Shown piece after piece: positions 199 through 43,613 of a DNA stretch of 64,000 nt. Both the position numbers and the translations under genes were made by a program. The stretch covers positions 124,001-188,000 of the IMG/VR virus record IMGVR_UViG_3300005537_000001. The stretch is one strand, 5' to 3'. The notes under the pieces are model-generated. The model made no database searches. It was given only the letters and a program-made list of their open reading frames with translations, and was not told the origin of the DNA. The number at the start of each line of letters is the position of its first letter. Within the stretch, counting starts at the first letter, position 1.

Positions 199-272
199 TC
201 GCCCGTAGCTGAGTGGTTTAGCGAGGAACTCTAAATTCCGGTACGTGGGTTCGATTCCCATCGGGCGATCCA
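199..272 (+). tRNA. Amber suppressor tRNA (anticodon CUA), probably Gln-type body
   Basis: Acceptor TCGCCCG/CGGGCGA, D arm GCT/AGC, anticodon loop CT-CTA-AA in GGAA/TTCC stem, GGTTCGATTCC T arm, T73 then CCA; U1-A72 and U73 as in this phage's tRNA-Gln(CTG). Confidence 0.9.
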
Positions 273-10127: not shown

Positions 10128-10424
10128 ATGCTTGCCGAATACACATCAATCGAGCGTAGATCACACATCCGCCACCGCGCCCGAACAGACGTTCGCATTC
10201 GAAAATTAAGCGGTCAATCCAAGATGTGCCGAGCTGTTAACCTATCAGCTCAGGGCGTTGGCATCCAAACAGATGACATGGGGCTTCTCAAGGGTGAGAT
10301 AGTCCAGCTTGTTTTCGCTATCAACCTCGGCTCCGTTAGCAAGCTTCACCGTCGAACTGCTCGAGTTGTTCACGTCCGCTCCGGTGTTACCGGATTTTTC
10401 ATGGACGCCTTCGCGGGTAAATGA
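10128..10424 (+). CDS. PilZ-domain (c-di-GMP-binding) protein
   Basis: ERRSHIR (RxxxR) and NLSAQG ([D/N]xSxxG) motifs; early promoter upstream. Confidence 0.8.
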   Translation: MLAEYTSIERRSHIRHRARTDVRIRKLSGQSKMCRAVNLSAQGVGIQTDDMGLLKGEIVQLVFAINLGSVSKLHRRTARVVHVRSGVTGFFMDAFAGK

Positions 10425-11449
10425 TGAAACCAAAGCTTCTAACCAGGGGAGAATTTCGCGACAGCGTCTTTCGCCGCGATGGATCCAAGTGCATCTTCTG
10501 CGAACAGCCCGCGGCAGATGCTCACCACATTCTTGAACGTCGCCTATGGCCAGACGGTGGATACTATCTGGAGAACGGTGCCAGCGTTTGCCCTCAACAC
10601 CACCTCGAGTGCGAGCGAACAACCATCAGCGTTGAAGAGGTTAGGCACGCGGCCAAAATCACTAAGATCTGGGTTCCTCCGCATCTGTACGATGATCACA
10701 TCTACGATAAGTGGGGTAACCCCATCTTGGAAGATGGTCGCCGAGGTCGGGGTGAGCTATTTTTTGACGAGTCGGTGCAAAAGGCTTTGAAAGAAGGAGG
10801 TGTTCTTGATCTCTTTACCCCCTATGTCAAGTATCCGCGCACACTCCATCTCCCTTGGTCTCCTGGATTTACTGATGACGACAAGGTTATGGAAGAACTT
10901 GATGCATTCAAGGACATGATAGTTGTCGTCACCGAGAAGATGGATGGTGAGAATACCACCATGTACCGCGATCACATCCACGCGCGCAGCATCGACAGCA
11001 GAGGTGGAGAAGATAGGGCATGGGTGAAGCAGTTTCACGCCCGCATCGCCCATGAGATACCAGAAGGTTGGCGCATCTGTGGTGAGAACCTTTGGGCAGA
11101 GCATTCCATCCACTATGACAATCTTAGATCGTATTTCTACGGCTTCAGCATCTGGAATGAAAAGAACGTTTGCCTTTCGTGGCATGATACGGTAGAATGG
11201 TTTTACCTTCTTGGTATCGAGCCCATGCCGGTGCTTTACAACGATTTTTGGGATACCGCAAACATCCGCAACCTTGAAAGATATCTGAAGTGGGAGAACA
11301 ACGAAGGTTACATCGTTCGAGTCGCTCACAGCTTTCCATATTCTCAATTCCGCAGAAGCGTTGCAAAGTTTGTCCGCAAGGGTCACGTCCAGACAACGAA
11401 GCACTGGCGAGCTGGGCGATCATTTATTCAAAATGGACTTGCACGATGA
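10421..11449 (+). CDS. HNH domain fused to ATP-dependent RNA ligase
   Basis: CIFC..DAHHI...NGASVCPQHH; KYPRT, EKMDGEN (motif I), EGYIVR, KFVR. Confidence 0.85.
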   Translation: MMKPKLLTRGEFRDSVFRRDGSKCIFCEQPAADAHHILERRLWPDGGYYLENGASVCPQHHLECERTTISVEEVRHAAKITKIWVPPHLYDDHIYDKWGNPILEDGRRGRGELFFDESVQKALKEGGVLDLFTPYVKYPRTLHLPWSPGFTDDDKVMEELDAFKDMIVVVTEKMDGENTTMYRDHIHARSIDSRGGEDRAWVKQFHARIAHEIPEGWRICGENLWAEHSIHYDNLRSYFYGFSIWNEKNVCLSWHDTVEWFYLLGIEPMPVLYNDFWDTANIRNLERYLKWENNEGYIVRVAHSFPYSQFRRSVAKFVRKGHVQTTKHWRAGRSFIQNGLAR

Positions 11450-12453: not shown

Positions 12454-13221
12454 ATGCATTGGGTAATTCAAGAGGATCTCTTTCAGGAAAACGGACGTGA
12501 AGTTCTTCTTGACATCTTGGAAAAGATGGGCATCCCATTTCAGGTGGTCAAGATTGTTCCATTCTCGCACGAACTGATTCCAGAAGTTACCGCGACTAAT
12601 CCGATTATCACCAACGGTTCCGTTATGCTCTCCAAGATAGCGCGAGAGCGTGGTTGGGAACCTGGAGGATATCTCAATGACAACTTTGACTATCGCGTTT
12701 GGTTCCCACACCTCAAGCCGTACCTCCTAAACAGCGACGCTGTTTTCTGCACCGCAGCTCACGCCTTCCCAGATCCAAGATGGTCCGATGTATTCATTCG
12801 ACCACAGCTGGACAATAAGTCCTTCAATGGACAGGTGATGACGATGGAAGAATTTATCATCTGGAAGGCTGGTATTTTGGTTGGTGACAACGAGCAAGTT
12901 AAGCCAGATACAGAGATCATCTACACCACGCCCAAGAAGGTGGGCCAGGAACATCGACACTTTATCGTAGATGGAAAGGTGGTGACAAGCAGCCGCTACA
13001 AGCTGAATGGACGATCAAATCAGCAGGCGGGAGCTGATGACTACATCGTCGACTTCGCAAATCGAATGGCGGGCATCTTTTCGCCGGCAAGAGCGTTCGT
13101 GCTTGATACCTACGTTACTGGAGATGAGCTTGGAATTGTAGAGCTTGGATGCGCCGCCAACGCCGGTTTCTACAAGTGCGATGTTCAGAAATTGGTGATG
13201 GCATTGGAGGACGCTGTATGA
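12454..13221 (+). CDS. ATP-grasp (R2K/DUF4343-like) protein
   Basis: FIRP..DNKSFNGQV, EHRHFIVDGKVVTSSRY, FVLD..IVE...AGFY. Confidence 0.75.
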   Translation: MHWVIQEDLFQENGREVLLDILEKMGIPFQVVKIVPFSHELIPEVTATNPIITNGSVMLSKIARERGWEPGGYLNDNFDYRVWFPHLKPYLLNSDAVFCTAAHAFPDPRWSDVFIRPQLDNKSFNGQVMTMEEFIIWKAGILVGDNEQVKPDTEIIYTTPKKVGQEHRHFIVDGKVVTSSRYKLNGRSNQQAGADDYIVDFANRMAGIFSPARAFVLDTYVTGDELGIVELGCAANAGFYKCDVQKLVMALEDAV

Positions 13222-16737: not shown

Positions 16738-16863
16738 GGTGATGTAGTGTAATGGCAGCACGCGAAAACATCGATCGCAAATTTTGTTGTGACCCAACCG
16801 TCAGTGATTGGTTATCCACTCATAAAGGCGAAGATTACGTTCGAATCGTAACAATCACCACCA
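16738..16863 (+). ncRNA. tRNA/Y-RNA hybrid (circularly permuted YrlA-like) ending in CCA
   Basis: GGTGAT/ATCACC-A-CCA, D arm, TTACG-TTCGAAT-CGTAA T arm; anticodon arm replaced by ATCGATCGC-AAAT-TTTGTTG...CAACCGTCA-GTGATTGGT-TATC. Confidence 0.65.
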
Positions 16864-16870
16864 AACAAAT

Positions 16871-18056: not shown

Positions 18057-18137
18057 TTGACAACCGACTCGCGACCGAGGGTTATCCATCCAAGATAAAC
18101 ATCCTCAACCGCAATGCCGCAAGGCCTTTGTTGTCAA
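18057..18137 (+). ncRNA. Y-RNA-like small RNA
   Basis: TTGACAAC-C-GA / TT-GTTGTCAA bulged-C terminal helix; GGTTATCC motif. Confidence 0.55.
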
Positions 18138-19285: not shown

Positions 19286-19379
19286 GCCGAGGTAGCTCAG
19301 AGCTGGTCAAAACCCAGCGCCGGTAGAGCGGGTGCCCAACAGCACCGCGTCGTTGGTTCGAATCCAACCCGAGGCGCCA
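19286..19379 (+). ncRNA. tRNA-like RNA: D-loop hairpin insert, 6-nt anticodon loop, GA/GA mismatches in acceptor stem
   Basis: GCCGAGG/CCGAGGC-G-CCA; GCTGG..CCAGC insert; GGTGC-CCAACA-GCACC. Confidence 0.65.
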
Positions 19380-19551: not shown

Positions 19552-19651
19552 GCCGAAGTAGCTTAGAGTGGTGCGCAAAATAAATCCACGTCGGTAGAGC
19601 GTCCACCCGGAAACGTGGAAGACGATGGTTCGAATCCATTCTGAGGCACCA
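19552..19651 (+). ncRNA. tRNA-like RNA paralogous to 19286-19379 (D-loop insert, 8-nt anticodon loop)
   Basis: GCCGAAG/CTGAGGC-A-CCA; GTGG..CCAC insert; TCCAC-CCGGAAAC-GTGGA. Confidence 0.65.
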
Positions 19652-25100: not shown

Positions 25101-25203
25101 AGAGATGTCGTATAATGGTATTACCCCGGTCTCCTAAGCACTTTCCTAAAGAGAGTTTTTAGGAAAACCGATGACGGGAGTTCGATTCTCTCCATCTCTG
25201 CCA
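25101..25203 (+). tRNA. tRNA-Trp-like gene with a 29-nt insertion in the anticodon loop
   Basis: AGAGATG/CATCTCT-G-CCA; removing 25135-25163 gives CCGGT-CT CCA AA-ACCGA. Confidence 0.7.
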
Positions 25204-30622: not shown

Positions 30623-31186
30623 TTGGAGAAAATTGTGAGCGATAAAAAACTAGAACCTAAGCTTGAACGAATGTTGATGTTTCAAACGGTCGGTAAGCTA
30701 GTAATAGGTGCTGTCGCATCAGCTTCATCGGTCTATCTATGCGGTAGCACGCTCGGGTGGACCATTATGTCAATGGTTGCAGCTGGAATTTTAACTTGGT
30801 TTCTGATGAAGCTCGGAATTATCATGGTCACCATATTTTTCCAGCTTGTATTTTACCGCGGCGACTACGCTGCCCTTCTTGCCGACGCGAACAAGGCGCA
30901 AGAAATTCTCAACAGGCGCTCTGACGTAATCATCAAGCGCGTTGGTGGGTCAATACCGACCGCGGAAATTATCAAAACCGATGAAAAATCGATTGGCTCA
31001 TTCGATGGAACAGCATTTTACGAGTGGGTTGAGCTACTCGGTAAGGATGGTAAAAACTATCGCTTCAACTACTATGGCACCGACGCTTCTCGCGCGCCCA
31101 AGAGGAGACCAATCCCAGAAGATTGCATCTACATCGCGCCTGGAATACTTTATCAGGTTGCTCCTGAGATAAATACCTCCGCATAA
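30623..31186 (+). CDS. Membrane protein
   Basis: Two hydrophobic segments. Confidence 0.65.
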   Translation: MEKIVSDKKLEPKLERMLMFQTVGKLVIGAVASASSVYLCGSTLGWTIMSMVAAGILTWFLMKLGIIMVTIFFQLVFYRGDYAALLADANKAQEILNRRSDVIIKRVGGSIPTAEIIKTDEKSIGSFDGTAFYEWVELLGKDGKNYRFNYYGTDASRAPKRRPIPEDCIYIAPGILYQVAPEINTSA

Positions 31187-31241
31187 TTTCGGAAAATAAA
31201 TTGTACTTTTGCCCTACGGCATGTTACAATTTCCGAGTTAA

Positions 31242-31321
31242 AGAGTTCAACGGAACCGGAGTTAATTGGTTATCTTGCATTACCCGATTAACAATCATTT
31301 GTTTCACTCCATTTGAATTCT
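31242..31321 (+). ncRNA. Mini Y-RNA-like RNA upstream of Ro60
   Basis: GAGTTCAA/TTGAATTC; GGAAC-C-GG/TT-GTTTC bulged helix; GTTAATTGG/CCGATTAAC; early promoter 31201-31230. Confidence 0.65.
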
Positions 31322-31328
31322 CGCAGTT

Positions 31329-31718
31329 AAAATTTCTTTGCTCAACGTGATCACCAAAGTTCCTCCACCGGAGCAGCTTGGTTAACAATCATGTACGTTA
31401 GTGGATGGGTGTTGTTACCCCTGCAGGGTTCAGCACGCGCAAACGGTGTCAAGGCTGTTCCACCAAATTCTTGAATGGTTGCTGGTTAGAGAAAATCAGA
31501 TAGTGCTGACTGACCGTCAGATAGTTGCTGGTTAGAATGACCAGATAGATTACCGCATAGTCGAATCAAGCGGTGTAGGTAGGCACAATGGGAATAGTCC
31601 CATCGTGTAATTTGTTCGAAACCTTCGGGTTAGACTCATGATTTTCGGATCATGTAAACTATCGAAGTTCCCAACTGCAACATTTGTTGGGGAATTTTGT
31701 TGATCACGTTGAAATTTT
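31329..31718 (+). ncRNA. Giant (~390 nt) Y-RNA-like structured RNA immediately upstream of Ro60
   Basis: TCAACGTGATCA.CAAAGTTCCTC / GGGGAATTTTG.TGATCACGTTGA long-range stem; CAC-C-GGA/TTTGTT helix; GCAG(C)TTGG/CCAACTGC; internal UUCG hairpins. Confidence 0.65.
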
Positions 31719-31758
31719 GCCGTCGCTAGCAACGATAGCCGCTATAGGAGATCATATC

Positions 31759-33393
31759 ATGGCTAAGAAGAACTCAATCTACATCAACACGATGTCTACT
31801 AATCCACGTACGACCGTTACACCACAGACTCAGGCATTGCCTGGTCGTGAAGCCGAAATGGTTGCAAACTCCGCGGGTGGAGTTACGTTCCAACTTGACG
31901 TTTGGGGACAGCTCGATCGCTTCCTAATCCTCGGATCAGATACACCAACGTATTACGCTTCAGCGAAGACGCTCACGAAGCAAAACGGTGCGAACGTTCT
32001 CAAGGCTATCAAGCTTGATGGTACAAAGACCGTTAACCGCATCACCGAAATCTCTCTTGGCGGTCGCGCTCCGAAGAATGATCCTGCCGTGTTCGCCTTG
32101 GCGCTCTGCGCCATTCATGGTGATGAAAACACCGTTAAGGCCGCCTACGCGGCTCTACCGAAGGTTTGCCGAATCGGCACTCACCTGTTTCAGTTCGTCG
32201 CGGCGCTCGATGAAATTGGCAAGTGGAACGCAGCCGCAAAGCGCGGTGTTGCAGCGTGGTACACCGGCCGAGGTGTCGACAAGCTGGCAGTTCAGCTCTT
32301 GAAGTACCAGTCTCGCGATGGCTGGGCGCACCGCGACGTCCTACGGCTCGCGCACGTCAAGCCGGCTAATGATGTTCAGTCTGCCCTGTTCCGCTACGCG
32401 GTTAAGGGCGCCGAGGGACTTGAACCGAACACTGAGGTTCCTCAGCTGCTCGTTGACTTCGAGAAGCTCAAGACCGCCGACGCGAAAACAACGATCAAGT
32501 TGATCGAGTCTAACGACGACATCACTTGGGAAATGATCTCGACCGAGCATCTCAAGGATCCAAAGGTCATGGCCGCGATGATCCCAAACATGGGGCTGAC
32601 CGCTCTTATTCGCAAGCTTGGTCAGCTGACCAGCATCGGCGTCATCAAGCCGTTGTCTTCGGACATGTCGGTCGTTCTCAATAAGCTTACCGACACTGAG
32701 GCCCTAAAGGGTGGTCGCGTTCACCCACTTCAGCTCCTAATCGCGCTGAAGCAATATTCTGTTGGACATGGCTTGAAGGGTAGCTTGGTGTGGAAGCCGG
32801 TGGCGCAGGTTGTTGACGCGTTGAATGATTCGTTCTACGAGGCGTTCAACTTCATCCCAACGACCAATGAGGGTTACCTGTTTGGTCTTGACATCTCCGG
32901 TTCAATGTTCGGTGGTGAGGTATCCGGCGCGCCGGGTATGTATCCAGCCGAAGTATCAGCGGTTATGGCTCTTGCCGTCGCGAAGCGTGAGAACAACTAT
33001 GAGATGTTCGGATTCGACAAGACTCCGAAGCCTTTGAAGATTTCTCCGTCGATGCGCCTGGATACTGTTATTGAGGCGATGAAGAATCTCCGCTGGTCAG
33101 GTGGTGGTACTGACTGCTCGCTGCCGATGCTGTACGCGCTTGATCGTGGATACAGTGGCATATCTGCCTTCGTTACTTTCACCGATAATGAAACATGGGC
33201 CGGCAAAATGCAGCCAGTAGAAGCATTGGCTCGTTACCGTAACAAATACAACCCAGCTGCAAAAATGATTGTCTGCGGTATGACTGGAACCCCATTCACT
33301 ATCGCTGATCCAAAAGATCCGGGGTCACTTGATCTTGTTGGATTTGACAGCTCTTGCCCTCAGTTGATACAGAGCTTTGCCAGCGGGAAATAA
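31759..33393 (+). CDS. rsr: Ro60/TROVE-domain RNA-binding protein (Rsr)
   Basis: NSAGG..F, LDRFLILG, KYQSRDGWAHRDVLRLAH, vWA DISGSM, GGTDC, TDNETW, LDLVGFD. Confidence 0.95.
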   Translation: MAKKNSIYINTMSTNPRTTVTPQTQALPGREAEMVANSAGGVTFQLDVWGQLDRFLILGSDTPTYYASAKTLTKQNGANVLKAIKLDGTKTVNRITEISLGGRAPKNDPAVFALALCAIHGDENTVKAAYAALPKVCRIGTHLFQFVAALDEIGKWNAAAKRGVAAWYTGRGVDKLAVQLLKYQSRDGWAHRDVLRLAHVKPANDVQSALFRYAVKGAEGLEPNTEVPQLLVDFEKLKTADAKTTIKLIESNDDITWEMISTEHLKDPKVMAAMIPNMGLTALIRKLGQLTSIGVIKPLSSDMSVVLNKLTDTEALKGGRVHPLQLLIALKQYSVGHGLKGSLVWKPVAQVVDALNDSFYEAFNFIPTTNEGYLFGLDISGSMFGGEVSGAPGMYPAEVSAVMALAVAKRENNYEMFGFDKTPKPLKISPSMRLDTVIEAMKNLRWSGGGTDCSLPMLYALDRGYSGISAFVTFTDNETWAGKMQPVEALARYRNKYNPAAKMIVCGMTGTPFTIADPKDPGSLDLVGFDSSCPQLIQSFASGK

Positions 33394-33456
33394 GTTCCTC
33401 TAACGTAATGCTGCAGCTCGAGCCTTTAGAATTATTGGCTCGAGCTGGCAGCATCT

Positions 33457-34122
33457 TTAGATTGCATATATATGCCCGACTATGTAAGGTGGGACACTAT
33501 TTAGGAATCCGTAAACTACGGAATATTGATGATCGATCTGATAAGGATCATTTGAATATCCGTATCCTCCTCTCTTTTCAAAATTTTCTAGTAGGTGTAG
33601 TGGTTGTCGATTAGTAACTTTGTCTACTTGATATTGATATTTTTGAAAATCGCTCTTGCCCTCTAAACCAGCGTAAACCCCAAAACGCGTAATGGCAGTG
33701 TTGATAGCGGCGCGAACGAATAGATCATTGCCATTTTCATCAATCGTGTTTCTCTTTGTTTCAACTGTTTTTGCTATCCCTTTGTAAGAGCCATCTGGTA
33801 ATCGTCGTGATGAAGCAACGGCCAACATATTCTTCTGAAACCCGGTTAACCCATTTTCATCTTTAACACTCATAGTGGCTCTTCGTTTATCCATAAGCAG
33901 TTGTCTTCGTGTTTTACCATCAACAGCTTCATTCATGGTTATATTCGCCTTTGCTGCGCCTAGTTTTCCAGTACCGCGTAATATTTTTGTTTTTCCAGCT
34001 TTACGAGCTGCGATAATAGACTTTCTTAATCCTGTAACTGGATCTATTTCTTGCGCTCTTCTGAGCGCAGCCAATGAATAATTTCTTCGTTTGATTTCTG
34101 GATCAACGGGAATGTATGCCAT
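33457..34122 (-). pseudogene. HNH homing endonuclease frameshifted at an (AT)n run
   Basis: YQIDH...GHI; deleting one AT at about 33466-33473 restores CNLKMLPARANNSKG..CSITLEEL. Confidence 0.65.
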
Positions 34123-37420: not shown

Positions 37421-39379
37421 ATGAAATTGAGTTCAACCTTCACTTCATCTTTCGCAAGAAAGTTTGCATCCAACGCCGAGATGCCCATTCTGGATTATCT
37501 CGATCTCTGTAAAACCGATAAGATGGTGTATGCCAACGCGGCAGAACGAATTTTAGCTTCCATCGGTGAACCAACGGTAGTCGACACTTCAAGCGACCCT
37601 CGCCTATCACGCATTTTCAGCAACAAGAAAATACGTACCTACGAGGCGTTCAAGGAGTTTTACGGAGCTGAAGAAGCCATTGAGCGCATCGTCGCCTACT
37701 TTACGGCCTTCGCTCAGGGGCTAGAAGAATCAAAGCAGATCCTTTATCTCAAGGGACCGGTTGGTGGTGGTAAAAGTTCTTTGGTCGAGCGGCTTAAAGA
37801 ACTAATGCAGACATATCCGATTTATGTTTTGAAGGATCCTTCAGAGAAAAATGCGGAACTGCAGCTCTCTCCTCTGTTCGAAAGTCCGCTCGGCCTTTTT
37901 AACAAGCTTGAGCATGGTGAAGAGCTGGAAAAAGAGTATGGCATTTCTCCACGCTATCTCAACACGGTTTCTTCAGGCTGGGCGCAGCAGAAGCTCCAGG
38001 AATTCGGTGGTGATTGGACTAAATTCAGCGTTGTCAAGATTTATCCAAACAAGGATTCCCAGATTGGCATCATGAAGGTTGAGCCAGGCGACGAGAATAA
38101 TCAAGACGTTTCAGTTCTTATCGGCAAGACCGATATTCGCAAGCTGAAAACTTATCAGCAAAATCACTCATACAGCTACAGCTACTCCGGTGGTTTAAAC
38201 CGCACGACCCAGGGTTTCATGGATTTTGCCGAAATGTTCAAGGCGAACATTAAGACGCTAAATCCGCTCTTGATGGCGACGCAAGAACACAACTACAACG
38301 GTACCGAAAATATCCCAGCGATGCCGTACATCGGCATCATCTGCGCCCACTCAAACGAGGCAGAATGGTTCAAGTTCCGAAACGATAAGTCAAATGAGGC
38401 CTTCCTAGACCGCGTTTACATCGTCAACGTTCCATACTGTCTACGAGTTAGCGAGGAGCAGAAAATTTACGAGAAGATGCTCCGAGGTTCAAGCTTGAAG
38501 AATGAGGCGTGCGCCCCTGAAACCCTGAAGGCGCTGGCCGAGTTCATGGTCCTCACGCGCCTGCGTGAACCAGAAAACAGCACTATCTACGCCAAGATGA
38601 AGGTGTATGACGGTCAGAACGTGAAGGATACCATGCCGATGGCTAAGCCTTACGAGGAGTACCGCGAGGCTGGTGGTATCGATGAAGGTATGACCGGCTT
38701 GTCTACCCGCTTTGGCTTCAAGATTCTTTCAGCGACTTACAACCTACGTCCGGAAGAAATTCAGGCCAACCCAATCGACCTCATGTACGTTCTGGAACAA
38801 GCGCTAAAGCGCGAGCACCTGCCAAGCGAAGCTCAGGAACAGTACCTTGACTTCATCAAGTCGTGGGTGCAGCCGCGCTACTTCGAGTTTATCGACAAGG
38901 AACTTCGCATGGCGTACCTCGAGTCCTACAGCGAGTTTGGTCAGACGATGTTCGAGCGCTACTGCTTGTTTGCCGAATCATGGTGCGATGACGTTACCTG
39001 CCGCGACCCAGAAACTCACACGCTTTTGAACCGCGAGCACCTCAACACTAAGCTTGAAGAAGTAGAAAAGGCAGCTGGCATTCCAAACGCGAAGGATTTT
39101 CGCAACGACATCGTGCACTACGTTCTTCGCTACCGCTCGCGCAATGAAGGCAAGATGCCAAAATGGAATGAGTACGAAAAGATCAAGGTCGTCATCGAGA
39201 AGAAGATGTTCTCAGCTACTACCGAAATCATGCCAATCGTTTCATTCACACCAAAAGGTTCAGCTGAAGAGCAGAAGAAGCATAACGACTTTGTCGCTCG
39301 CATGAGAAGCAAAGGATATACTGACAGACAGATTCGCACGCTAGTAGATTGGTGGTGTAACAACCGGAAAGCCTCGTAG
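37421..39379 (+). CDS. yeaG: PrkA/YeaG AAA+ serine kinase family protein
   Basis: QILYLKGPVGGGKSS, EPGDENNQD, EMFKA, HSNE.EW, NEAFLDR. Confidence 0.95.
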   Translation: MKLSSTFTSSFARKFASNAEMPILDYLDLCKTDKMVYANAAERILASIGEPTVVDTSSDPRLSRIFSNKKIRTYEAFKEFYGAEEAIERIVAYFTAFAQGLEESKQILYLKGPVGGGKSSLVERLKELMQTYPIYVLKDPSEKNAELQLSPLFESPLGLFNKLEHGEELEKEYGISPRYLNTVSSGWAQQKLQEFGGDWTKFSVVKIYPNKDSQIGIMKVEPGDENNQDVSVLIGKTDIRKLKTYQQNHSYSYSYSGGLNRTTQGFMDFAEMFKANIKTLNPLLMATQEHNYNGTENIPAMPYIGIICAHSNEAEWFKFRNDKSNEAFLDRVYIVNVPYCLRVSEEQKIYEKMLRGSSLKNEACAPETLKALAEFMVLTRLREPENSTIYAKMKVYDGQNVKDTMPMAKPYEEYREAGGIDEGMTGLSTRFGFKILSATYNLRPEEIQANPIDLMYVLEQALKREHLPSEAQEQYLDFIKSWVQPRYFEFIDKELRMAYLESYSEFGQTMFERYCLFAESWCDDVTCRDPETHTLLNREHLNTKLEEVEKAAGIPNAKDFRNDIVHYVLRYRSRNEGKMPKWNEYEKIKVVIEKKMFSATTEIMPIVSFTPKGSAEEQKKHNDFVARMRSKGYTDRQIRTLVDWWCNNRKAS

Positions 39380-39392
39380 CCCAGGTTGACAG

Positions 39393-39947
39393 ATGTTAGG
39401 GCAATATTACTGCTACATATTTCGTGATCCCAAAACCGAGATTCCTAGATACGTTGGCAAGGGAGTGAATGATAGAGTTTGGACTCACATAGATTATCCA
39501 TCTAACACTCGCACTGATAGGATGCTAGTGAAGAGACATAGGGAAGGATACTCTTGTGTACCCGAAATTATCTACTGCAAGAATGAGGAACAGGCTTTCA
39601 GTTTAGAGATGTGGTTCATTTGGAAATATGGGCGTGAAGATCAAGGTCGAGGTACACTTTTCAATCTCACAGATGGTGGAGAAGGTTTGACAGGTATCTC
39701 AGAAGAAACTCGCCAGAAGATGTCAATAGCTAAAACTAGATATCTCACTGGTAGAAAACACGATGAAGCAAGACGCAAGAGACAAGGGCAGAGGATGAAG
39801 GGTATTCCGAATGTCGCAGCGAGCAAGAAGCTTCAAAAGCGTTGCACTGTAGATGGTGAGAATATCTATCCATCTGTTAGAGATTTAGTGGCAGCACTAG
39901 GTCATGGTAAAAATGGAGCACGATCTCCAAGTTTGAGGTTCATATGA
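39393..39947 (+). mobile_element. GIY-YIG homing endonuclease with NUMOD3-like motif
   Basis: YCYIFRDP..RYVGKG..R..H; NLTDGGEG..SEETRQKMS. Confidence 0.85.
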
Positions 39948-40104
39948 ATAATGAAGTAACTAAAACAGCGATTGCGGGTCTGGCCGCATCCATCAACCGC
40001 GTAGCGGAACAACTAGCCGTACAAAATAATCAGCAGGTTTTGCAGAACAATCTTCTAAGACGAATCGCTGACGCTCTTGATCAACAGAATTCAACGGTGC
40101 GCTG

Positions 40105-40428
40105 ATGGGCTACTCACATGAAGAATTAAGTGAAATTTGGTGGGCCTCTACAAAGCCCGCGCTGGCGCCATATGCGGATCATTACAAATTTGGAATCGAT
40201 GCGTGCGGGGCTTTGATAGAATGGGCAGCATATGGTAAGGCTGATTCAGATAATCCCGGCAACACAGCATGGGAAGTAGCGCACAAGATCGCCATTGCAG
40301 AGGGTGGAACAGACAATAAAAACAATCTTATAGCCCTTCAGTGGACGAATAATCGCAGACAGGGCACTCGCCCACTTCGAGTTTTCCTTGAAGCCGTGAG
40401 CGAGCATATGACTTGGAAACGCAAGTAG
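40105..40428 (+). CDS. HNH-like endonuclease
   Basis: WEVAH...GGTDNKNNLIALQWTNNR. Confidence 0.7.
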   Translation: MGYSHEELSEIWWASTKPALAPYADHYKFGIDACGALIEWAAYGKADSDNPGNTAWEVAHKIAIAEGGTDNKNNLIALQWTNNRRQGTRPLRVFLEAVSEHMTWKRK

Positions 40429-40686
40429 TGCGAATCAATATAAACCAACTTAACACAAACCCACAGGAAATTGAACCAAACGATTTGACAATTTCCGAAA
40501 CAGGGCCGTGGAGCGTGAGCGTTGGAAAGTCTGAGGCAGGTACCTTGAAGGTATGCCTTCAGTCGGATGATTTTCACCACGACGTCGCTTTGTACATCAC
40601 TGGAGATTTCTGCGATAATGACCAGCGAATCGAATATGCTCGACTTCTTGCCGATCGAATGAATCGTATGCCGAAGGAGTAAAGAC

Positions 40687-42105
40687 ATGTCTTTCATCCT
40701 CATCGATAGAAGAAAGGCGGGTAGGGGAAAATCATCTTCAAACCGTCAAAAGCTCATTAAGCGAATAAAGGGCTTCATCAAGGCATCTTCCCCGCAAAAT
40801 ATTGGCAAATTCGGGGTTTCTGGTCAGAACAACCCAGCCCCTGGGGCTGGTGGATCCAGCCCTGTTAAGGTTGCCGGCGCGGCTCTTGAGGAACCGCACT
40901 TTCACTATTCTAGGGATGGCAATCATACAGCAATTATCATTGGCAATCAAGAGTATGATCGCGGTGATGAAATAGAAATACCATCCGATGAAGGTAGCTC
41001 AAGTCGGGGTGGTCCCGGAGATGCCGGTGAAGACGATTTCATAGTCTCTGTCGCGCGCGACGAATTTTTGGATCTTTTCTTTGAGGATTGCGAGCTACCG
41101 AATCTAGTCAATGAGAAGTGGACTGAGAGGCTTGATAATAAAACCCAACAAGCTGGGTTTTCTACTATTGGTTCTCCGGCTCAGCTAAGCGTAATCCGCA
41201 CCTACAAGCAAGCTCTCGGACGCTCAAGCGCGATGGCAGCTTTGGTGGAGGATGAAAAGGAAGAGCTGCTAGAAGAGCTTGCGGCAATATTTGAAAATTT
41301 AACCGGCGCTAAGCATGGCACTCCTGAAGAACTACTCCGGGTGCTCAACATCCACATGACGATTAACCTAATGCAGGATGAAGTCGGTAAACGAATAGCT
41401 TCGATCCTATCCCGTCTCAAGGAGCTAGATGACGAGATTGATTTCCTGGATGGGTTCGATTCTTCCGATCTTCGCTACCGCAAGAAGGAAGCTAAACCTC
41501 TCAAGACGGTAGACGCCGTTCTCTTCATGCTCATGGACATTTCCGGCTCCATGGATGAAACAAAGAAGACGATAGCCCGTCGTTGGTTCGCGCTGTTCTA
41601 CGCGTTCATTCGCCGGCGCTATCCAAACACCGAGCTTGTGTTCATCGCTCACACCGATGAAGCGTTTGAAATGTCCGAAAATGATTTCTTCTCCACGCGG
41701 GTCAACGGTGGAACTACCGTATCTCCAGCGCTGAAGATGATTAATACCATAATCAAAGAGCGCTACGATCCGAATGAAGTCAACATCTACATATCCCACG
41801 CGTCAGATGGTGATAATTGGGATGAGGACAACAGCGTCGTCATCGATGAAATGATCGGTGAGGGCAACCTCATGAAGAAGATCCAACTGTTCAGCTACGT
41901 TGAAGTTGGTAAACCGATGGGAACCGGCTGGTTTAACGTTGGAGCTGGAATATCAGGAACTACTACGAGAGAAGATACCGGGTTGTGGGTAGCCTACGAT
42001 AAGGTTCGCGATGGGGTAGTTGATAAGAAGATGACCCTGTCGATAATCGAATCGGCGGATGAATGCTACCCAGTGTTTCAGAAAATTTTCAAGAAGAAAA
42101 AATAA
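40687..42105 (+). CDS. yeaH: YeaH/YhbH (vWA) protein
   Basis: LIDRR..KSSSNRQK, DLRYR, LMDISGSM, GGT.VS, HASDGDNW. Confidence 0.92.
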   Translation: MSFILIDRRKAGRGKSSSNRQKLIKRIKGFIKASSPQNIGKFGVSGQNNPAPGAGGSSPVKVAGAALEEPHFHYSRDGNHTAIIIGNQEYDRGDEIEIPSDEGSSSRGGPGDAGEDDFIVSVARDEFLDLFFEDCELPNLVNEKWTERLDNKTQQAGFSTIGSPAQLSVIRTYKQALGRSSAMAALVEDEKEELLEELAAIFENLTGAKHGTPEELLRVLNIHMTINLMQDEVGKRIASILSRLKELDDEIDFLDGFDSSDLRYRKKEAKPLKTVDAVLFMLMDISGSMDETKKTIARRWFALFYAFIRRRYPNTELVFIAHTDEAFEMSENDFFSTRVNGGTTVSPALKMINTIIKERYDPNEVNIYISHASDGDNWDEDNSVVIDEMIGEGNLMKKIQLFSYVEVGKPMGTGWFNVGAGISGTTTREDTGLWVAYDKVRDGVVDKKMTLSIIESADECYPVFQKIFKKKK

Positions 42106-43613
42106 TGACGCAACCACTTATTACCTCGCGCACCGATTGGAACGAAGGACTAATCAATAACATCACCAAGATTATTGAGGAAGTAGCTCATGAGGAGCTT
42201 GACATCGATCCAAGCAAGGATATATACCCCAACCAGATCGAAATAATTCCAGCTGAAATGATGATCGACGCGTACGCGTCTGTTGGTATGCCGGTAAACT
42301 ACAGTCACTGGTCATTCGGCAAAGAGTTTCTCAAGAATTGGACAAAGTACCAGAAGGGTCGAATGGGACTCGCGTATGAAATCGTCATCAATTCTAACCC
42401 GTGCATCTCATATCTCATGGAGGAAAACCCAGCCATAACGCAGGCGCTGGTTATAGCGCACGCCGCGATTGGCCACAATTTCGTCTTCAAGAATAACTTC
42501 ATGTTCAGGGAATGGACAACTCCAAGCTCCATCATTGATTACATGATCTTCGCCAAGAACTACATCAAGGAGTGCGAGGAAAAATATGGTGAGGACGAGG
42601 TTGAGCAGCTGCTCGATGCCGCTCACGCCTTATCGACGCACGCTGTTGATAAGCAAAAGCGAAAGCACAAGAAGAAAAAGACAGAAGAGGACAAGCTGAA
42701 GGAAGAAGCCAAGAAGGCCGATGATAAGCACAAGGACATGGACATCATCATCCAAACCACGTCGGTTGTAGCCCCTGAAAAGGAAAAGACCGATCAAGAC
42801 TTGGACCGGGTTAACGACGAGGAAAATATTCTCTACTTCATCTACAAGCACGCCCCAAACATGCCCCAGTGGAAGAAGGAAATCCTGCGCATCGTGTACA
42901 AGATTCAGCAGTACTTCTACCCGCAGGGACAAGACAAGACGCTAAATGAAGGCATGGCGACCTTCACCCACTTCCACATCATGGACACTCTGGAGCAGCG
43001 CGGAATAATTTCACCGGATGCTCAGCTTGCTTGGCTGCACCTTCACTCCAACGTAGTGTATCAACCAAATATGCGCTCGAAGCACTATGACGGTAGCTTC
43101 AACCCGTACGCCTTAGGCTTGGATATACTTCGAGAGATAAAGAGAATTTGTGAGTATCCAACTAAGGAGGATCAAGAATGGTTTCCTCACCTAGCTGGAG
43201 AGGATTGGAGAAAGCAAATCAAGCTCGCGGTTACTGACTATCGAGATGAAAGCTTCATCGAACAATTCTTGACGCCTAATCTTATGCGAAAGTACAACAT
43301 GATGAGCGTCAATTATACGGGATCCAAGGGAATCGTTACCGAAATTTCTGACGATATCGGCTATCGCAACATGCGCCGCTCCCTTGCCGCGCAGTACAAT
43401 CCGATCAATTTTATTCCAGACATCGTGGTTAGCGGTGCGCGGATGAGAGCGGATAGAATGCTGACTCTCGAATATAGACCGTATCTTGGCAGATCACTGC
43501 ATGAAGCTACTGCTAAGAAAACGCTGGCACACGTTAAGGCGCTATGGGGATATGACGTTGAAATAGTAGAAAATGCCGGTGACGACGTCTACAGAGTTCT
43601 CTACAGAACTTAA
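42105..43613 (+). CDS. ycgB: SpoVR/YcgB family protein
   Basis: YPNQIE, GMP..Y.HWSFGK, GLAYEIVINS.PC, YFYPQ...NEG.ATF, NPYALG. Confidence 0.93.
   Translation: MTQPLITSRTDWNEGLINNITKIIEEVAHEELDIDPSKDIYPNQIEIIPAEMMIDAYASVGMPVNYSHWSFGKEFLKNWTKYQKGRMGLAYEIVINSNPCISYLMEENPAITQALVIAHAAIGHNFVFKNNFMFREWTTPSSIIDYMIFAKNYIKECEEKYGEDEVEQLLDAAHALSTHAVDKQKRKHKKKKTEEDKLKEEAKKADDKHKDMDIIIQTTSVVAPEKEKTDQDLDRVNDEENILYFIYKHAPNMPQWKKEILRIVYKIQQYFYPQGQDKTLNEGMATFTHFHIMDTLEQRGIISPDAQLAWLHLHSNVVYQPNMRSKHYDGSFNPYALGLDILREIKRICEYPTKEDQEWFPHLAGEDWRKQIKLAVTDYRDESFIEQFLTPNLMRKYNMMSVNYTGSKGIVTEISDDIGYRNMRRSLAAQYNPINFIPDIVVSGARMRADRMLTLEYRPYLGRSLHEATAKKTLAHVKALWGYDVEIVENAGDDVYRVLYRT

What the first reader, a model, noticed from the sequence alone, without database searches (positions are those of the whole stretch)
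31201..33393. Ro60 operon led by a mini Y RNA and a giant ~390-nt Y RNA with a novel internal domain
After an early promoter come two RNAs with the same architecture: outer stem, bulged-C helix (AC-C-GG/TTTGTT), AA(T)CA internal loop, inner stem. In 31242-31321 the inner stem closes a short loop. In 31329-31718 it encloses ~290 nt of hairpins, including two UUCG loops and a duplicated GTTGCTGGTTAGA..CAGATAG unit. Established: Y RNAs are modular, with a Ro-binding stem plus an effector-recruiting domain (e.g. PNPase in Deinococcus), and are typically ~100-150 nt. Inference: one phage Ro60 is reprogrammed by at least four different Y RNAs, one far larger than those I know of, making a new RNP system probably tied to tRNA quality control or anti-defence.
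Basis: partly seen in the sequence, partly recalled or inferred. Interest (0 to 1): 0.87.

Follow-up and report, generated by a model that had tools for sequence, protein, structure and literature searches.

The report
Giant Y RNA family in jumbo phages
Upstream of a jumbo phage's Ro60 gene lie an ordinary small Y RNA and a ~370-nt RNA that has the same Ro60-binding stem but carries a conserved ~290-nt domain with no match among known RNA families. About 35 related uncultured phages have the same large RNA, which makes it a new, very large variant of a known class of RNA.

Summary
Window 31201-33393 is one + strand unit: a promoter-like site, a small Y RNA (31236-31323), a giant Y-like RNA (core 31343-31711), a short hairpin just before the ribosome-binding site, and a canonical Ro60 gene (31759-33393).

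Both RNAs share the same module: terminal stem, C-G pair, bulged C, G·U, asymmetric loop, upper stem, GGUUAUC. This is the module of metazoan Y RNAs and nematode sbRNAs.

The giant RNA is not chance. The whole Ro60 clade with at least 50% identity to the window (39 tips, all uncultured phage contigs, many 250-370 kb) has it wherever upstream DNA is available. Each copy has a 15-27-bp closing stem of different sequence but kept complementarity. An internal block is conserved and covaries (92.6% paired against 65.9% when shuffled).

The internal domain is not tRNA-like and matches no Rfam family. No paper in the searched library describes it.

Arrays of several Y-type motifs upstream of one Ro60 gene are common, so that part of the finding is ordinary. 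Ro60 binding and any function are inferred, not shown.

A by-product: a hairpin that mimics the Y-RNA stem sits just before the Ro60 ribosome-binding site in 49 loci. It may be an autoregulatory operator.

Verdict: new variant of a known kind; interest 0.62.

The parts
31201..31230 (+). Sigma-70-like promoter: -35 TTGTAC (31201-06), 18-nt spacer, -10 TACAAT (31225-30). Predicted start around 31236, which is the 5' end of the small Y RNA.
   Evidence: Sequence. T[TG]TAC-N17/18-TAnAAT lies at the same place in the closest relatives, and 13 of 27 loci match a strict pattern. Not listed on the + strand by the consensus scan.
31236..31323 (+). Small Y RNA, about 80-88 nt. Outer stem, pyrimidine-rich asymmetric loop, GGAAC/GUUUC helix with C31256-G31301 and bulged C31257, upper stem, GGUUAUC (31267-73).
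   Evidence: RNAalifold on 13 orthologues gives 14 pairs, 10 with compensatory changes. CM R1 scores 73.9 bits, by construction. Weak hit to the nematode sbRNA family. The L093 orthologue scores 37 bits against a gathering score of 38.
31343..31711 (+). Giant Y-like RNA, covariation-supported core of 369 nt. A window-only predicted extension reaches 31329-31719.
   Evidence: Fold z = -4.4. Closing stem conserved by covariation in 27 loci. Family-specific internal block found once per locus.
31343..31369 (+). 5' strand of the closing stem P1, ending in paired C31368 and bulged C31369.
   Evidence: The C-G anchor is present in 27 of 27 loci. Positions 1-18 are paired in about 70-96% of loci with 4-6 pair types each.
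31686..31711 (+). 3' strand of P1, preceded by the invariant UUUG (31683-86).
31373..31386 (+). Upper stem P2 5' strand GCAG[C]UUGG, overlapping the Y-RNA signature GGUUAAC (31380-86). Partner CCAACUGC at 31671-78.
   Evidence: RNAalifold pairs at columns 51-55 with 562-566 of A2. Covarying outer part read in the relatives' sequences.
31382..31670 (+). Internal domain of 289 nt: a variable 5' sub-domain, tandem hairpins, the conserved block and a terminal sub-domain.
   Evidence: No Rfam family. No tRNA or tmRNA call. No conserved ORF.
31478..31548 (+). Three tandem hairpins of the form UUG-stem-purine-rich loop-stem-AUAG.
   Evidence: Sequence. Similar units occur 1-4 times in many relatives.
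31519..31582 (+). Family-defining conserved block: hairpin CUGGU/ACCAG (31528-44, loop UAGAAUG), hairpin ACCGC/GCGGU (31552-74), and the GUAGG motif (31575-79).
   Evidence: CM R2 scores 58.9 bits and this is its only hit in the 64-kb window. Covariation 0.627 against 0.195 for shuffles, 0 of 500 shuffles as high.
31578..31663 (+). Terminal sub-domain closed by GGUAG (31578-82) pairing with CUAUC (31659-63). It holds three hairpins, two with UUCG loops (31620-31 and 31637-54).
   Evidence: Closing pairs at columns 427-429 with 535-537 of A2 show compensatory changes. Constrained fold.
31716..31741 (+). 'Ro-box' hairpin in the rsr leader: UUUG, stem, loop, stem, C, CG. It is the Y-RNA stem motif closed by a loop. 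The window's copy is degenerate (6 bp with one mismatch).
   Evidence: The descriptor is found within 110 nt upstream of Ro60 in 49 of 216 loci, against about 1 expected. RNAalifold on 30 loci. The window's copy was not recovered by CM R3 or by the MFE fold.
31746..31750 (+). Ribosome-binding site AGGAG, 8 nt before the ATG.
   Evidence: Sequence.
31759..33393 (+). Ro60 (rsr) gene, 544 aa, with TROVE and Ro60 vWA domains.
   Evidence: Pfam PF25045 at 4.8e-50 and PF05731 at 5.7e-32. PDB matches: 2NVO at 3.5e-105, 1YVP at 1e-102.
33408..33454 (.). 17-bp inverted repeat between the convergent genes. Likely a bidirectional terminator that ends the operon.
   Evidence: Sequence. The next gene is on the - strand at 33457-34122. 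There is no U-run on the + strand, and the terminator scan did not list it.

Best explanation
The locus is a non-coding-RNA plus rsr operon of a ~368-kb uncultured jumbo phage. A host-type promoter starts transcription at the 5' end of a small Y RNA. The giant Y RNA follows, then a short leader hairpin, then Ro60.

Both RNAs present the same Ro60-binding module: terminal stem, C-G pair, bulged C, G·U, asymmetric loop, upper stem, GGUUAUC. The phage Ro60 ring is therefore expected to bind both (inferred, not shown).

In the giant RNA the usual short apical loop is replaced by a conserved ~290-nt multi-hairpin domain. That domain most likely acts as the effector or specificity module. It could recruit a partner such as a host 3'-5' exoribonuclease (PNPase is the partner for known Y RNAs) or a phage factor, or it could gate the Ro60 cavity. 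This step is also inferred.

The 16-27-bp near-perfect closing stem is a plausible RNase III site that would release the RNA from the primary transcript (inferred).

The hairpin before the ribosome-binding site copies the Y-RNA stem motif. It probably lets Ro60 that is not bound to a Y RNA repress its own translation (inferred).
For: Shown:
1. The Ro60 gene is canonical.
2. The small Y RNA is supported by covariation. It resembles the Rfam nematode sbRNA family, which are Y-RNA homologues: weakly in the window and at 37 bits against a gathering score of 38 in orthologue L093.
3. The giant RNA has the same invariant elements. The C-G anchor is present in 27 of 27 loci, followed by the bulged C, then N7-9, then UUGGUUAUC on the 5' side, with CCRAY-N-UUUG on the 3' side.
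4. The closing stem covaries. A mean of 13.7 of 16 gapless positions pair, against 7.3 when strands from different loci are combined and 5.6-7.1 when the partner is slid. The 5' strands are only 32% identical. Duplex energies are -20 to -52 kcal/mol.
5. The internal block is conserved. R2 hits once per locus, on the + strand and upstream of rsr, in 28 sources including non-seed ones. The 100 more distant Ro60 loci gave only 2 weak hits at E 0.03-0.22, none at E<0.01.
6. In that block, 92.6% of cells pair against 65.9% when shuffled, and 67 cells have changes on both sides against 19.
7. All 39 tips under the common ancestor of giant-bearing Ro60 genes have the RNA wherever upstream DNA is held.
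8. In 5 loci small ORFs lie between the giant RNA and rsr. The RNA is therefore separable from the rsr leader.
9. No conserved ORF lies inside the RNA.

Precedent: the Ro60 of Thermus phage phiLo binds two upstream Y-like RNAs and host PNPase (PMC12135203). YrlA RNAs lie within 4 kb of rsr on the same strand (PMC4201824).
Against: - No binding, expression or processing data exist. All members are metagenomic, and no cultured phage has this RNA.
- The Rfam Y-RNA and sbRNA models and my own small-Y model R1 do not detect the giant RNA.
- There is no terminator between the RNAs and rsr. The region could act only as an unprocessed leader.
- The unconstrained MFE fold pairs the innermost part of the stem differently. 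The comparative fold costs 4 kcal/mol more.
- The internal domain lacks the tRNA-like module through which known bacterial Y RNAs work. The effector is therefore unknown.
- The window's own leader hairpin is degenerate.
Confidence: 0.7

Rival explanations
1. The ~500-nt region is a cis-acting 5' leader of the rsr mRNA. It would be a sensor or autoregulatory platform that controls Ro60 synthesis and is never released as a separate RNA.
For: Same strand and same promoter, with no terminator-like site between the RNAs and rsr. A Ro-motif hairpin sits at the ribosome-binding site, so Ro60 binding to its own transcript is plausible.
Against: In L011, L015, L102, L103 and L038, ORFs of 70-150 codons separate the giant RNA from rsr, while the leader hairpin stays with the ribosome-binding site. 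L115 keeps the hairpin but has no Y RNAs. The RNA is closed by its own long terminal stem, as free Y RNAs are. Bacterial Y RNAs are normally co-transcribed with rsr (PMC4201824).
Confidence: 0.13
2. It is a large structured RNA with a function of its own, such as a ribozyme, a decoy for a host RNA-binding defence or nuclease, or a precursor of several small RNAs. It would merely be encoded next to rsr, and its stem would resemble a Y RNA only superficially.
For: The internal domain has conserved single-stranded motifs (GGUGUAGG, CUGAAAUNUCC) and tandem hairpins with GAA-rich loops that are unlike any Y-RNA module. Rfam gives no family.
Against: The invariant elements at the base of the domain are exactly those of the neighbouring small Y RNA and of sbRNAs. 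The RNA was found only in the one Ro60 clade, always upstream and on the same strand. The search started from Ro60 genes, however, so linkage was not tested without bias.
Confidence: 0.1
3. Chance hairpins in an AT-rich intergenic region, or an assembly artefact.
For: None beyond the absence of database matches.
Against: Identical sequence in two independent contigs. Covariation in about 35 divergent loci. Fold z = -4.4.
Confidence: 0.01

Closest known systems
Metazoan Y RNAs and nematode stem-bulge RNAs (Rfam RF00019 and RF01656)
   Same: A terminal stem made from the 5' and 3' ends. A C-G pair followed by a bulged C and G·U on the 5' strand, with UUG on the 3' strand. An asymmetric A/C-rich internal loop, an upper stem, and GGUUAUC directly after the upper stem. 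The Rfam sbRNA consensus printed reads ..GGUCCGGAGU..UGGGUUAUC....CACCAACUUGACC. The partner protein is a canonical Ro60, as close to Xenopus Ro60 as to Deinococcus Rsr.
   Different: Those RNAs are about 70-130 nt with a small loop. Here the loop is a conserved 245-340-nt domain. The RNA is phage-encoded, driven by a bacterial-type promoter and co-transcribed with rsr. The giant RNA scores nothing against the Rfam models.
Bacterial and mycobacteriophage YrlA / Yrn1 Y RNAs (Chen et al. 2014, PMC4201824)
   Same: Encoded next to rsr on the same strand, often in arrays. Modular: a Ro-binding stem plus an effector module.
   Different: YrlA is defined by a GNCGAAN0-1G motif and a tRNA-like domain (T arm, D arm, acceptor-like stem) and is about 100-140 nt. 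The giant RNA has ACCGGAG in place of that motif at the stem. It has no tRNA-like domain by ARAGORN or the Rfam tRNA model, whereas YrlA-type RNAs in L048 are picked up by the tRNA model. CGAA- and AGAA-containing hairpin loops do occur inside the domain.
Thermus phage phiLo Ro60 with Yrl1 and Yrl2 (PMC12135203)
   Same: A phage Ro60 with two Y-like RNAs directly upstream. Binding and a ternary complex with host PNPase were shown there.
   Different: The phiLo protein is a distant TROVE protein (E = 1e-9 to the window's Ro60). As described in that paper, its RNAs are small CGAA-type Y-like RNAs, and no large domain is reported.
Autoregulation by molecular mimicry (ribosomal-protein operators, the ThrRS operator)
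   Same: The leader hairpin copies the protein's main RNA target and lies 6-14 nt from the Shine-Dalgarno sequence. That is the arrangement of such operators (established knowledge; the analogy is inferred).
   Different: I found no Ro60 operator described in the searched library. Binding and repression are untested. The motif is circularly permuted relative to a Y RNA.
Large phage-associated structured RNAs (GOLLD, ROOL and similar)
   Same: Several hundred nucleotides, multi-hairpin, phage-borne, sometimes near tRNA genes.
   Different: No Rfam match. Those RNAs are not linked to Ro60 and lack the Y-RNA stem.

Membership tests
Y RNA (Ro60-associated non-coding RNA, in the broad sense) | Long stem formed by the 5' and 3' ends | tested here: met
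   15-27 bp in 27 loci. 13.7 of 16 positions pair, against 7.3 across loci and 5.6-7.1 when slid.
Y RNA (Ro60-associated non-coding RNA, in the broad sense) | Conserved bulged helix: C-G pair, bulged C and G·U on the 5' strand, UUG on the 3' strand | tested here: met
   C-G anchor in 27 of 27 loci. CCG and TT[TC]G were used as anchors and found in every giant RNA. The small Y RNAs have the same motif.
Y RNA (Ro60-associated non-coding RNA, in the broad sense) | Encoded next to the Ro60 gene on the same strand (the bacterial criterion of PMC4201824: within 4 kb) | tested here: met
   Every R2 hit lies 100-800 nt upstream of rsr on the + strand.
Y RNA (Ro60-associated non-coding RNA, in the broad sense) | Bound by Ro60 in vivo or in vitro | not testable with these tools
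   Needs EMSA or RIP. No cultured member.
Y RNA (Ro60-associated non-coding RNA, in the broad sense) | Small size (about 70-150 nt) | tested here: not met
   The window's core is 369 nt. In the 27 aligned relatives the stretch from the C-G anchor to UUUG is 245-339 nt, plus the stem.
Rfam Y_RNA (RF00019) and sbRNA (RF01656) | Score at or above the family's gathering threshold | tested here: not met
   Giant RNA: no hit at E up to 10. Small Y RNA: 17.4 bits in the window and 37 bits in L093, against a gathering score of 38.
YrlA (tRNA-like bacterial Y RNA) | tRNA-like domain (T arm, D arm, acceptor-like stem) | tested here: not met
   ARAGORN finds nothing in 27 loci. The Rfam tRNA model gives no hit in the region. 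As a positive control, YrlA-type RNAs in L048 are hit by the tRNA model.
YrlA (tRNA-like bacterial Y RNA) | GNCGAAN0-1G motif near the 5' end | tested here: not met
   The 5' strand reads CCACCGGAG in the window. CGAA occurs only in internal hairpin loops of some relatives.
Ro60 / TROVE protein | TROVE HEAT-repeat ring plus a C-terminal vWA domain | tested here: met
   PF05731 and PF25045. Full-length matches to 2NVO, 9NEN and 1YVP.
Known large bacterial or phage RNAs in Rfam (GOLLD, ROOL, HEARO, tmRNA, RNase P, group I/II introns) | A covariance-model match | tested here: not met
   No match at gathering score in the window or in 16 relatives. No match at E up to 10 inside the giant RNA.

The most novel reading that the evidence does not exclude
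The conserved ~290-nt domain turns a Y RNA into a scaffold. On it, the phage Ro60 would assemble with one or more further partners (a host exoribonuclease, a phage factor, or extra Ro60 rings on the GAA-loop hairpins). The result would be a jumbo-phage-specific RNP machine for RNA surveillance or counter-defence. Ro60 supply would be set by competition between the Y RNAs and a Y-stem mimic at its own ribosome-binding site.
Probability: 0.3. Interest if true: 0.8.

Novelty: new variant of a known kind. Interest (0 to 1): 0.62.

Why it matters
Y RNAs are thought of as ~100-nt adaptors whose loop decides what Ro60 does. How that loop works is known for only a few cases: PNPase tethering in Deinococcus and tRNA mimicry in YrlA.

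A phage lineage that keeps the ancient Ro60-binding stem but has expanded the loop into a conserved 290-nt domain offers a natural gain-of-module case. It can be expressed and bound in vitro, pulled down and imaged.

These phage RNAs carry the metazoan/sbRNA-type bulged-C helix and GGUUAUC rather than the bacterial CGAA-type motif. The Ro60 is also as close to the Xenopus protein as to Deinococcus Rsr. Both points bear on how old the Ro60-Y RNA recognition code is.

The Y-stem mimic before the ribosome-binding site, if it is an operator, would be the first proposed feedback control of Ro60.

Practical limits: there is no cultured phage or known host, so work would start from synthetic genes in laboratory strains.

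Tried and rejected
- Rfam at gathering score and at E up to 10, on the window and on relatives: nothing in the giant RNA. Rfam also has no model that recognises YrlA-type bacterial Y RNAs as such, so a missing hit is weak evidence of novelty on its own.
- DNA search of 50,697 phage records: no match. The best cultured relatives are 38-42% identical at the protein level. Sinorhizobium phage Phosso has no giant RNA.
- CM R1, built from small Y RNAs, was too specific. It found only the window's small Y RNA, not the giant RNA or the Y-like RNAs in the tRNA array.
- A full-length covariance model of the giant RNA could not be built. The alignment exceeds 400 columns and calibration would exceed the time limit.
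- mafft-qinsi and mafft-xinsi are not usable in the sandbox.
- Plain MAFFT plus RNAalifold on full-length RNAs recovered only 12 pairs, because the variable-length stems misalign. I therefore used anchor-based counting.
- CM R3 for the leader hairpin carries too little information. Its alignment mixes chance hits and it misses the window's copy. I relied on the descriptor scan with controls.
- tRNA-likeness of the domain: rejected.
- Coding potential: rejected.
- A possible long-range CUAC/GUAG pairing between the 5' junction and the GUAGG motif could not be tested, because both sides are invariant. I do not claim it.
- Neighbouring genes gave no RNA-related partner next to rsr.
- An unbiased collection-wide scan for the RNA was not run. 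The conserved motifs are too short or too degenerate for the exact-pattern search without hundreds of chance hits.
Full report
1. WHAT IS IN THE WINDOW

Position 31187-31758 is a 572-nt gap between an unannotated gene that ends at 31186 and a 544-aa ORF at 31759-33393.

The ORF is a canonical Ro60. It has the TROVE domain and the Ro60 vWA domain. It gives full-length matches to Deinococcus Rsr (2NVO, 3.5e-105), to an RO60 entry (9NEN) and to Xenopus Ro60 (1YVP, 1e-102). It is only distantly related to the Thermus phage phiLo protein (1e-9).

The window is part of a 368-kb viral contig, and an identical copy lies on a second contig. The window also carries 22-24 tRNA genes and an RNA ligase. 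No cultured phage matches at the DNA level. Among 360 phage records that encode a Ro-like protein, none exceeds 60% identity.

- Both have a terminal stem.
- Both have a C-G pair followed by a bulged C and G·U pairs opposite UUUG.
- Both have a short A/C-rich 3' loop, AAUCA in the small RNA and AACA in the large one.
- Both have an upper stem that runs into GGUUAUC (GGUUAAC in the large RNA).

In the large RNA the upper stem (31373-81 with 31671-78) encloses 289 nt. These include two UUCG hairpins and the duplicated unit at 31478-31503 and 31523-31548.

The large RNA folds far better than shuffles: -132.3 against -107.2 ± 5.7 kcal/mol, z = -4.4.

3. RELATIVES SHOW A FAMILY

I searched IMG/VR, JGI metagenomes and GTDB genomes with the Ro60 protein and obtained more than 200 distinct loci.

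In every locus whose Ro60 is at least about 50% identical to the window's, and for which upstream DNA is held, the same large RNA is present.

I counted pairs without gaps, outward from the invariant C-G pair, in 27 loci.
- Positions 1-18 are paired in roughly 70-96% of loci, and each position uses 4-6 different pair types.
- Over 16 positions, a mean of 13.7 pair. The figure is 7.3 when the 5' strand of one locus is combined with the 3' strand of another, and 5.6-7.1 when the partner is slid by 1-3 nt.
- The 5' strands are only 32% identical to each other.
- Duplex energies between the two flanks, which lie 245-339 nt apart, are -20 to -52 kcal/mol.

This is the signature of a selected helix.

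4. THE INTERNAL DOMAIN IS ALSO CONSERVED

The alignment shows fixed landmarks:
- UUGGUUAUC at the entry to the domain.
- A variable first sub-domain. In one subgroup it carries the motif ACGCAAGUUGAAAGACAAGCC.
- One to four tandem hairpins of the form UUG-stem-GAA-rich loop-stem-AUAG.
- A ~62-nt block made of one such hairpin, a second hairpin of the form ACC..stem..GGU, and GUAGG.
- A terminal sub-domain closed by GGN pairing with N'CY.
- CUGAAAUNUCC leading into the 3' strand of the upper stem.

A covariance model of the 62-nt block (R2) behaves as a family marker.
- It hits exactly once per locus, on the + strand and upstream of rsr, in 28 sources. These include ones not used to build the model. 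In the 64-kb window the only hit is 31519-31582.
- It hits one more relative found in the genome collection.
- In 100 more distant Ro60 loci it gives only 2 weak hits (E 0.03 and 0.22), none at E<0.01.

On the model-derived alignment, 92.6% of cells pair against 65.9% after shuffling. There are 67 cells with changes on both sides against 19, and the covariation score is 0.627 against 0.195 (0 of 500 shuffles as high). Slid controls score 0.11 or less. RNAalifold on the plain alignment independently predicts the upper stem, the first hairpin of the block and the closing helix of the terminal sub-domain, all with compensatory changes.

Open reading stretches inside the RNA differ in strand, frame and place between loci. 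The region does not code for protein.

5. DISTRIBUTION

On a Ro60 tree of 154 sequences, the common ancestor of the giant-bearing genes covers 39 tips, with FastTree support of 69.

Six of those tips had not been labelled as giant-bearing.
- L019/L020/L025, L117 and L118 turn out to have a large RNA with its own closing stem. L019 and L020 also give weak R2 hits at that spot; L117 and L118 gave no R2 hit.
- L017 has no upstream DNA.

So the RNA appears to be a single gain that characterises one clade. The contigs are viral or metagenomic, and many are 250-370 kb. The only 'genome' hit is a 2.3-kb contig binned into a cyanobacterial MAG. Bacterial Ro60 loci lack the RNA.

6. WHAT KIND OF RNA IS IT?

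The small RNA is a Y RNA by every sequence test available here.
- RNAalifold gives 14 pairs, 10 of them with compensatory changes.
- It resembles the Rfam nematode sbRNA family, whose members are Y-RNA homologues: 17 bits in the window and 37 bits in orthologue L093, against a gathering score of 38, E = 6e-4.
- The sbRNA consensus printed shows the same CCGGAGU...UGGGUUAUC and ...ACUUGACC elements.
- From memory, and not tested here, human Y1 and Y4 also carry GGGUUAUC right after the upper-stem strand.

The giant RNA carries the same invariant elements at its base. It differs only in what the upper stem encloses.

It is not a YrlA. The GNCGAA motif is not at the stem. ARAGORN and the tRNA model find nothing, although the tRNA model does pick up YrlA-type RNAs in another locus.

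Size is graded in phage Y RNAs. There are small ones of about 80 nt, ones of 125-160 nt in the L003 group, one of about 165 nt in the clade at 45% identity, and ones of 245-390 nt here. The giant RNA is the extreme of a modular design rather than a new class.

7. WHAT IS ORDINARY

The Y-type 5' motif (CCG, 5-13 nt, GGUUAUC) occurs 2-7 times upstream of many other Ro60 genes. YrlA arrays next to rsr have been described in 254 bacteria and 22 phages (PMC4201824). Two Y-like RNAs upstream of a phage Ro60, with shown binding to the protein and to host PNPase, are published (PMC12135203). TROVE proteins in jumbo phages have also been noted (PMC7824862).

I found no paper that describes a Y RNA of this size or this domain. 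The library does not hold most subscription journals.

8. THE LEADER HAIRPIN, A BY-PRODUCT

Just upstream of the rsr Shine-Dalgarno sequence, the relatives carry a hairpin of the form YUUG-stem(5-7 bp)-loop-stem-C-CG. This is the Y-RNA stem motif with the free ends joined by a loop.

A strict descriptor for it was scanned over 216 distinct loci (2.58 Mb counting both strands).
- It hits 49 loci within 110 nt upstream of the Ro60 match.
- It hits 95 times everywhere else. About 1 hit would be expected in the upstream windows.
- An earlier, narrower scan gave 25 hits against about 0.07 expected. Shuffled sequences gave 6-19 hits in total.

Further observations:
- The stems covary: GCUGC/GCAGC, GUUGAC/GUCAAC, GCUCGUG/CACGAGC, GUCCAG/CUGGAC.
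- The hairpin stays with the ribosome-binding site when ORFs separate the giant RNA from rsr.
- It is present in L115, which has no upstream Y RNA.
- It extends to clades at 42-47% identity.
- The window's own copy (31716-31741) is imperfect. Neither R3 nor the MFE fold recovers it.

My reading is that it is an operator through which free Ro60 represses its own translation, and which the Y RNAs relieve by competing for Ro60. This is an inference. An RNase processing site or a 5' stabiliser are alternatives.

9. MECHANISM: WHAT IS SHOWN AND WHAT IS INFERRED

Shown: gene order, the conserved motifs, covariation, clade restriction, and the absence of tRNA-likeness.

Inferred:
- Transcription starts at a promoter whose start coincides with the 5' end of the first RNA.
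- RNase III releases the giant RNA at its long stem.
- Ro60 binds the bulged helix.
- The 290-nt domain acts as the effector or gating module.
- The leader hairpin provides feedback control.

A phage Ro60-like protein that counters a defence system has been reported (Bas63 gp130 against Ppl, bioRxiv 10.1101/2024.10.10.617714). That keeps an anti-defence role open. The RNA ligase and tRNA array in the window fit RNA repair. Neither is evidence for this RNA's function.

10. VERDICT

This is a real, conserved and structured RNA family. It is best read as a giant Y RNA specific to one lineage of uncultured jumbo phages.
- New variant of a known kind.
- Confidence that it is a selected structured RNA: about 0.95.
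- Confidence that it is a Ro60-bound Y RNA working roughly as described: about 0.7.
- Interest: 0.62.

Noticed in passing
window 31716-31741; L008 2461-2482, L009 2460-2480, L124 about 2412-2437 and 46 other loci: A hairpin of the form YUUG-stem-loop-stem-C-CG lies 6-14 nt before the Ro60 Shine-Dalgarno sequence. It is a circularly permuted copy of the Y-RNA Ro-binding helix. It is present in 49 of 216 loci against about 1 expected, has covarying stems, and is kept even where no Y RNA is adjacent (L115). It may be a Ro60 autoregulatory operator. The window's copy is degenerate.
   Followed up: yes
window 18057-18137: A third Y-like RNA lies between tRNA-Glu and tRNA-Ile. UUGACAAC[C]G...GGGUUAUC...CCUUUGUUGUCAA has the standard Y architecture, and the fold gives z = -2.9. 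Conservation in relatives was not checked, because their tRNA regions were not fetched.
   Followed up: partly
window 16780-16870: A possible fourth Y-like element lies in the tRNA array. It has a Ro-motif hairpin (UUUUGUUG-loop-CAAC[C]G; weak R3 hit at 16782-16802), followed by UGAUUGGUUAUC and a perfect T-arm-like hairpin (UUACG-UUCGAAU-CGUAA). The fold is not better than shuffles (z = -0.5), so it is doubtful.
   Followed up: partly
window 199-272 and 2682-2759: ARAGORN calls two tRNAs with a CUA anticodon, that is, amber-suppressor type (it labels them 'Pyl'). This could point to TAG recoding in this phage.
   Followed up: no
window 19286-19376, 19552-19648 and 25101-25200: Three matches to the tRNA model span 91-100 nt for a 71-position model, and ARAGORN does not call them. 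They could be tRNAs with an intron or a long insertion, or tRNA-like RNAs.
   Followed up: no
window 31288-31298 and 31382-31392: An exact 11-nt repeat, TTAACAATCAT, is shared by the small Y RNA (upper-stem 3' strand plus loop) and the giant RNA (GGUUAAC plus junction). It may be a trace of duplication or recombination between the two RNAs, or it may be chance.
   Followed up: no
L011 2200-2430; L015 2000-2450; L102, L103, L038: One or two small ORFs (about 70-150 codons) are inserted between the giant RNA and rsr in five relatives. In the clade at 45% identity, a conserved ~95-codon ORF lies between a ~165-nt Y RNA and rsr. Their function is unknown.
   Followed up: no
L124 2370-2440; L133, L024, L130, L023: In the clade at 45% identity, a second Y-like element (GAUCGAACUGC[C]GGUCCU..AGGGACCAACC) ends in the UUG that also starts the leader hairpin. 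Two C[C]G strands could therefore compete for one UUG, giving alternative structures at the ribosome-binding site.
   Followed up: no
window 37421-43613: The phage carries a PrkA-type AAA kinase, a DUF444/vWA protein and a SpoVR-like protein in a row. From memory, this resembles the bacterial yeaG-yeaH-ycgB stress module, which would be unusual cargo for a phage.
   Followed up: no
window 10421-11449 and 12454-13221: An RNA ligase (PF09414) and an R2K-clade ATP-grasp protein lie near the tRNA array. This fits an RNA-repair toolkit in the same genome as Ro60.
   Followed up: no
window 30623-31186: The gene just upstream of the promoter has no Pfam or PHROG match. Read by eye from the upstream DNA, its C-terminus translates to about ...PPGIIYQV and the same ending recurs upstream in many relatives (L008, L090, L091, L093, L094, L096, L098). 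This could be ordinary synteny or a functional link.
   Followed up: no
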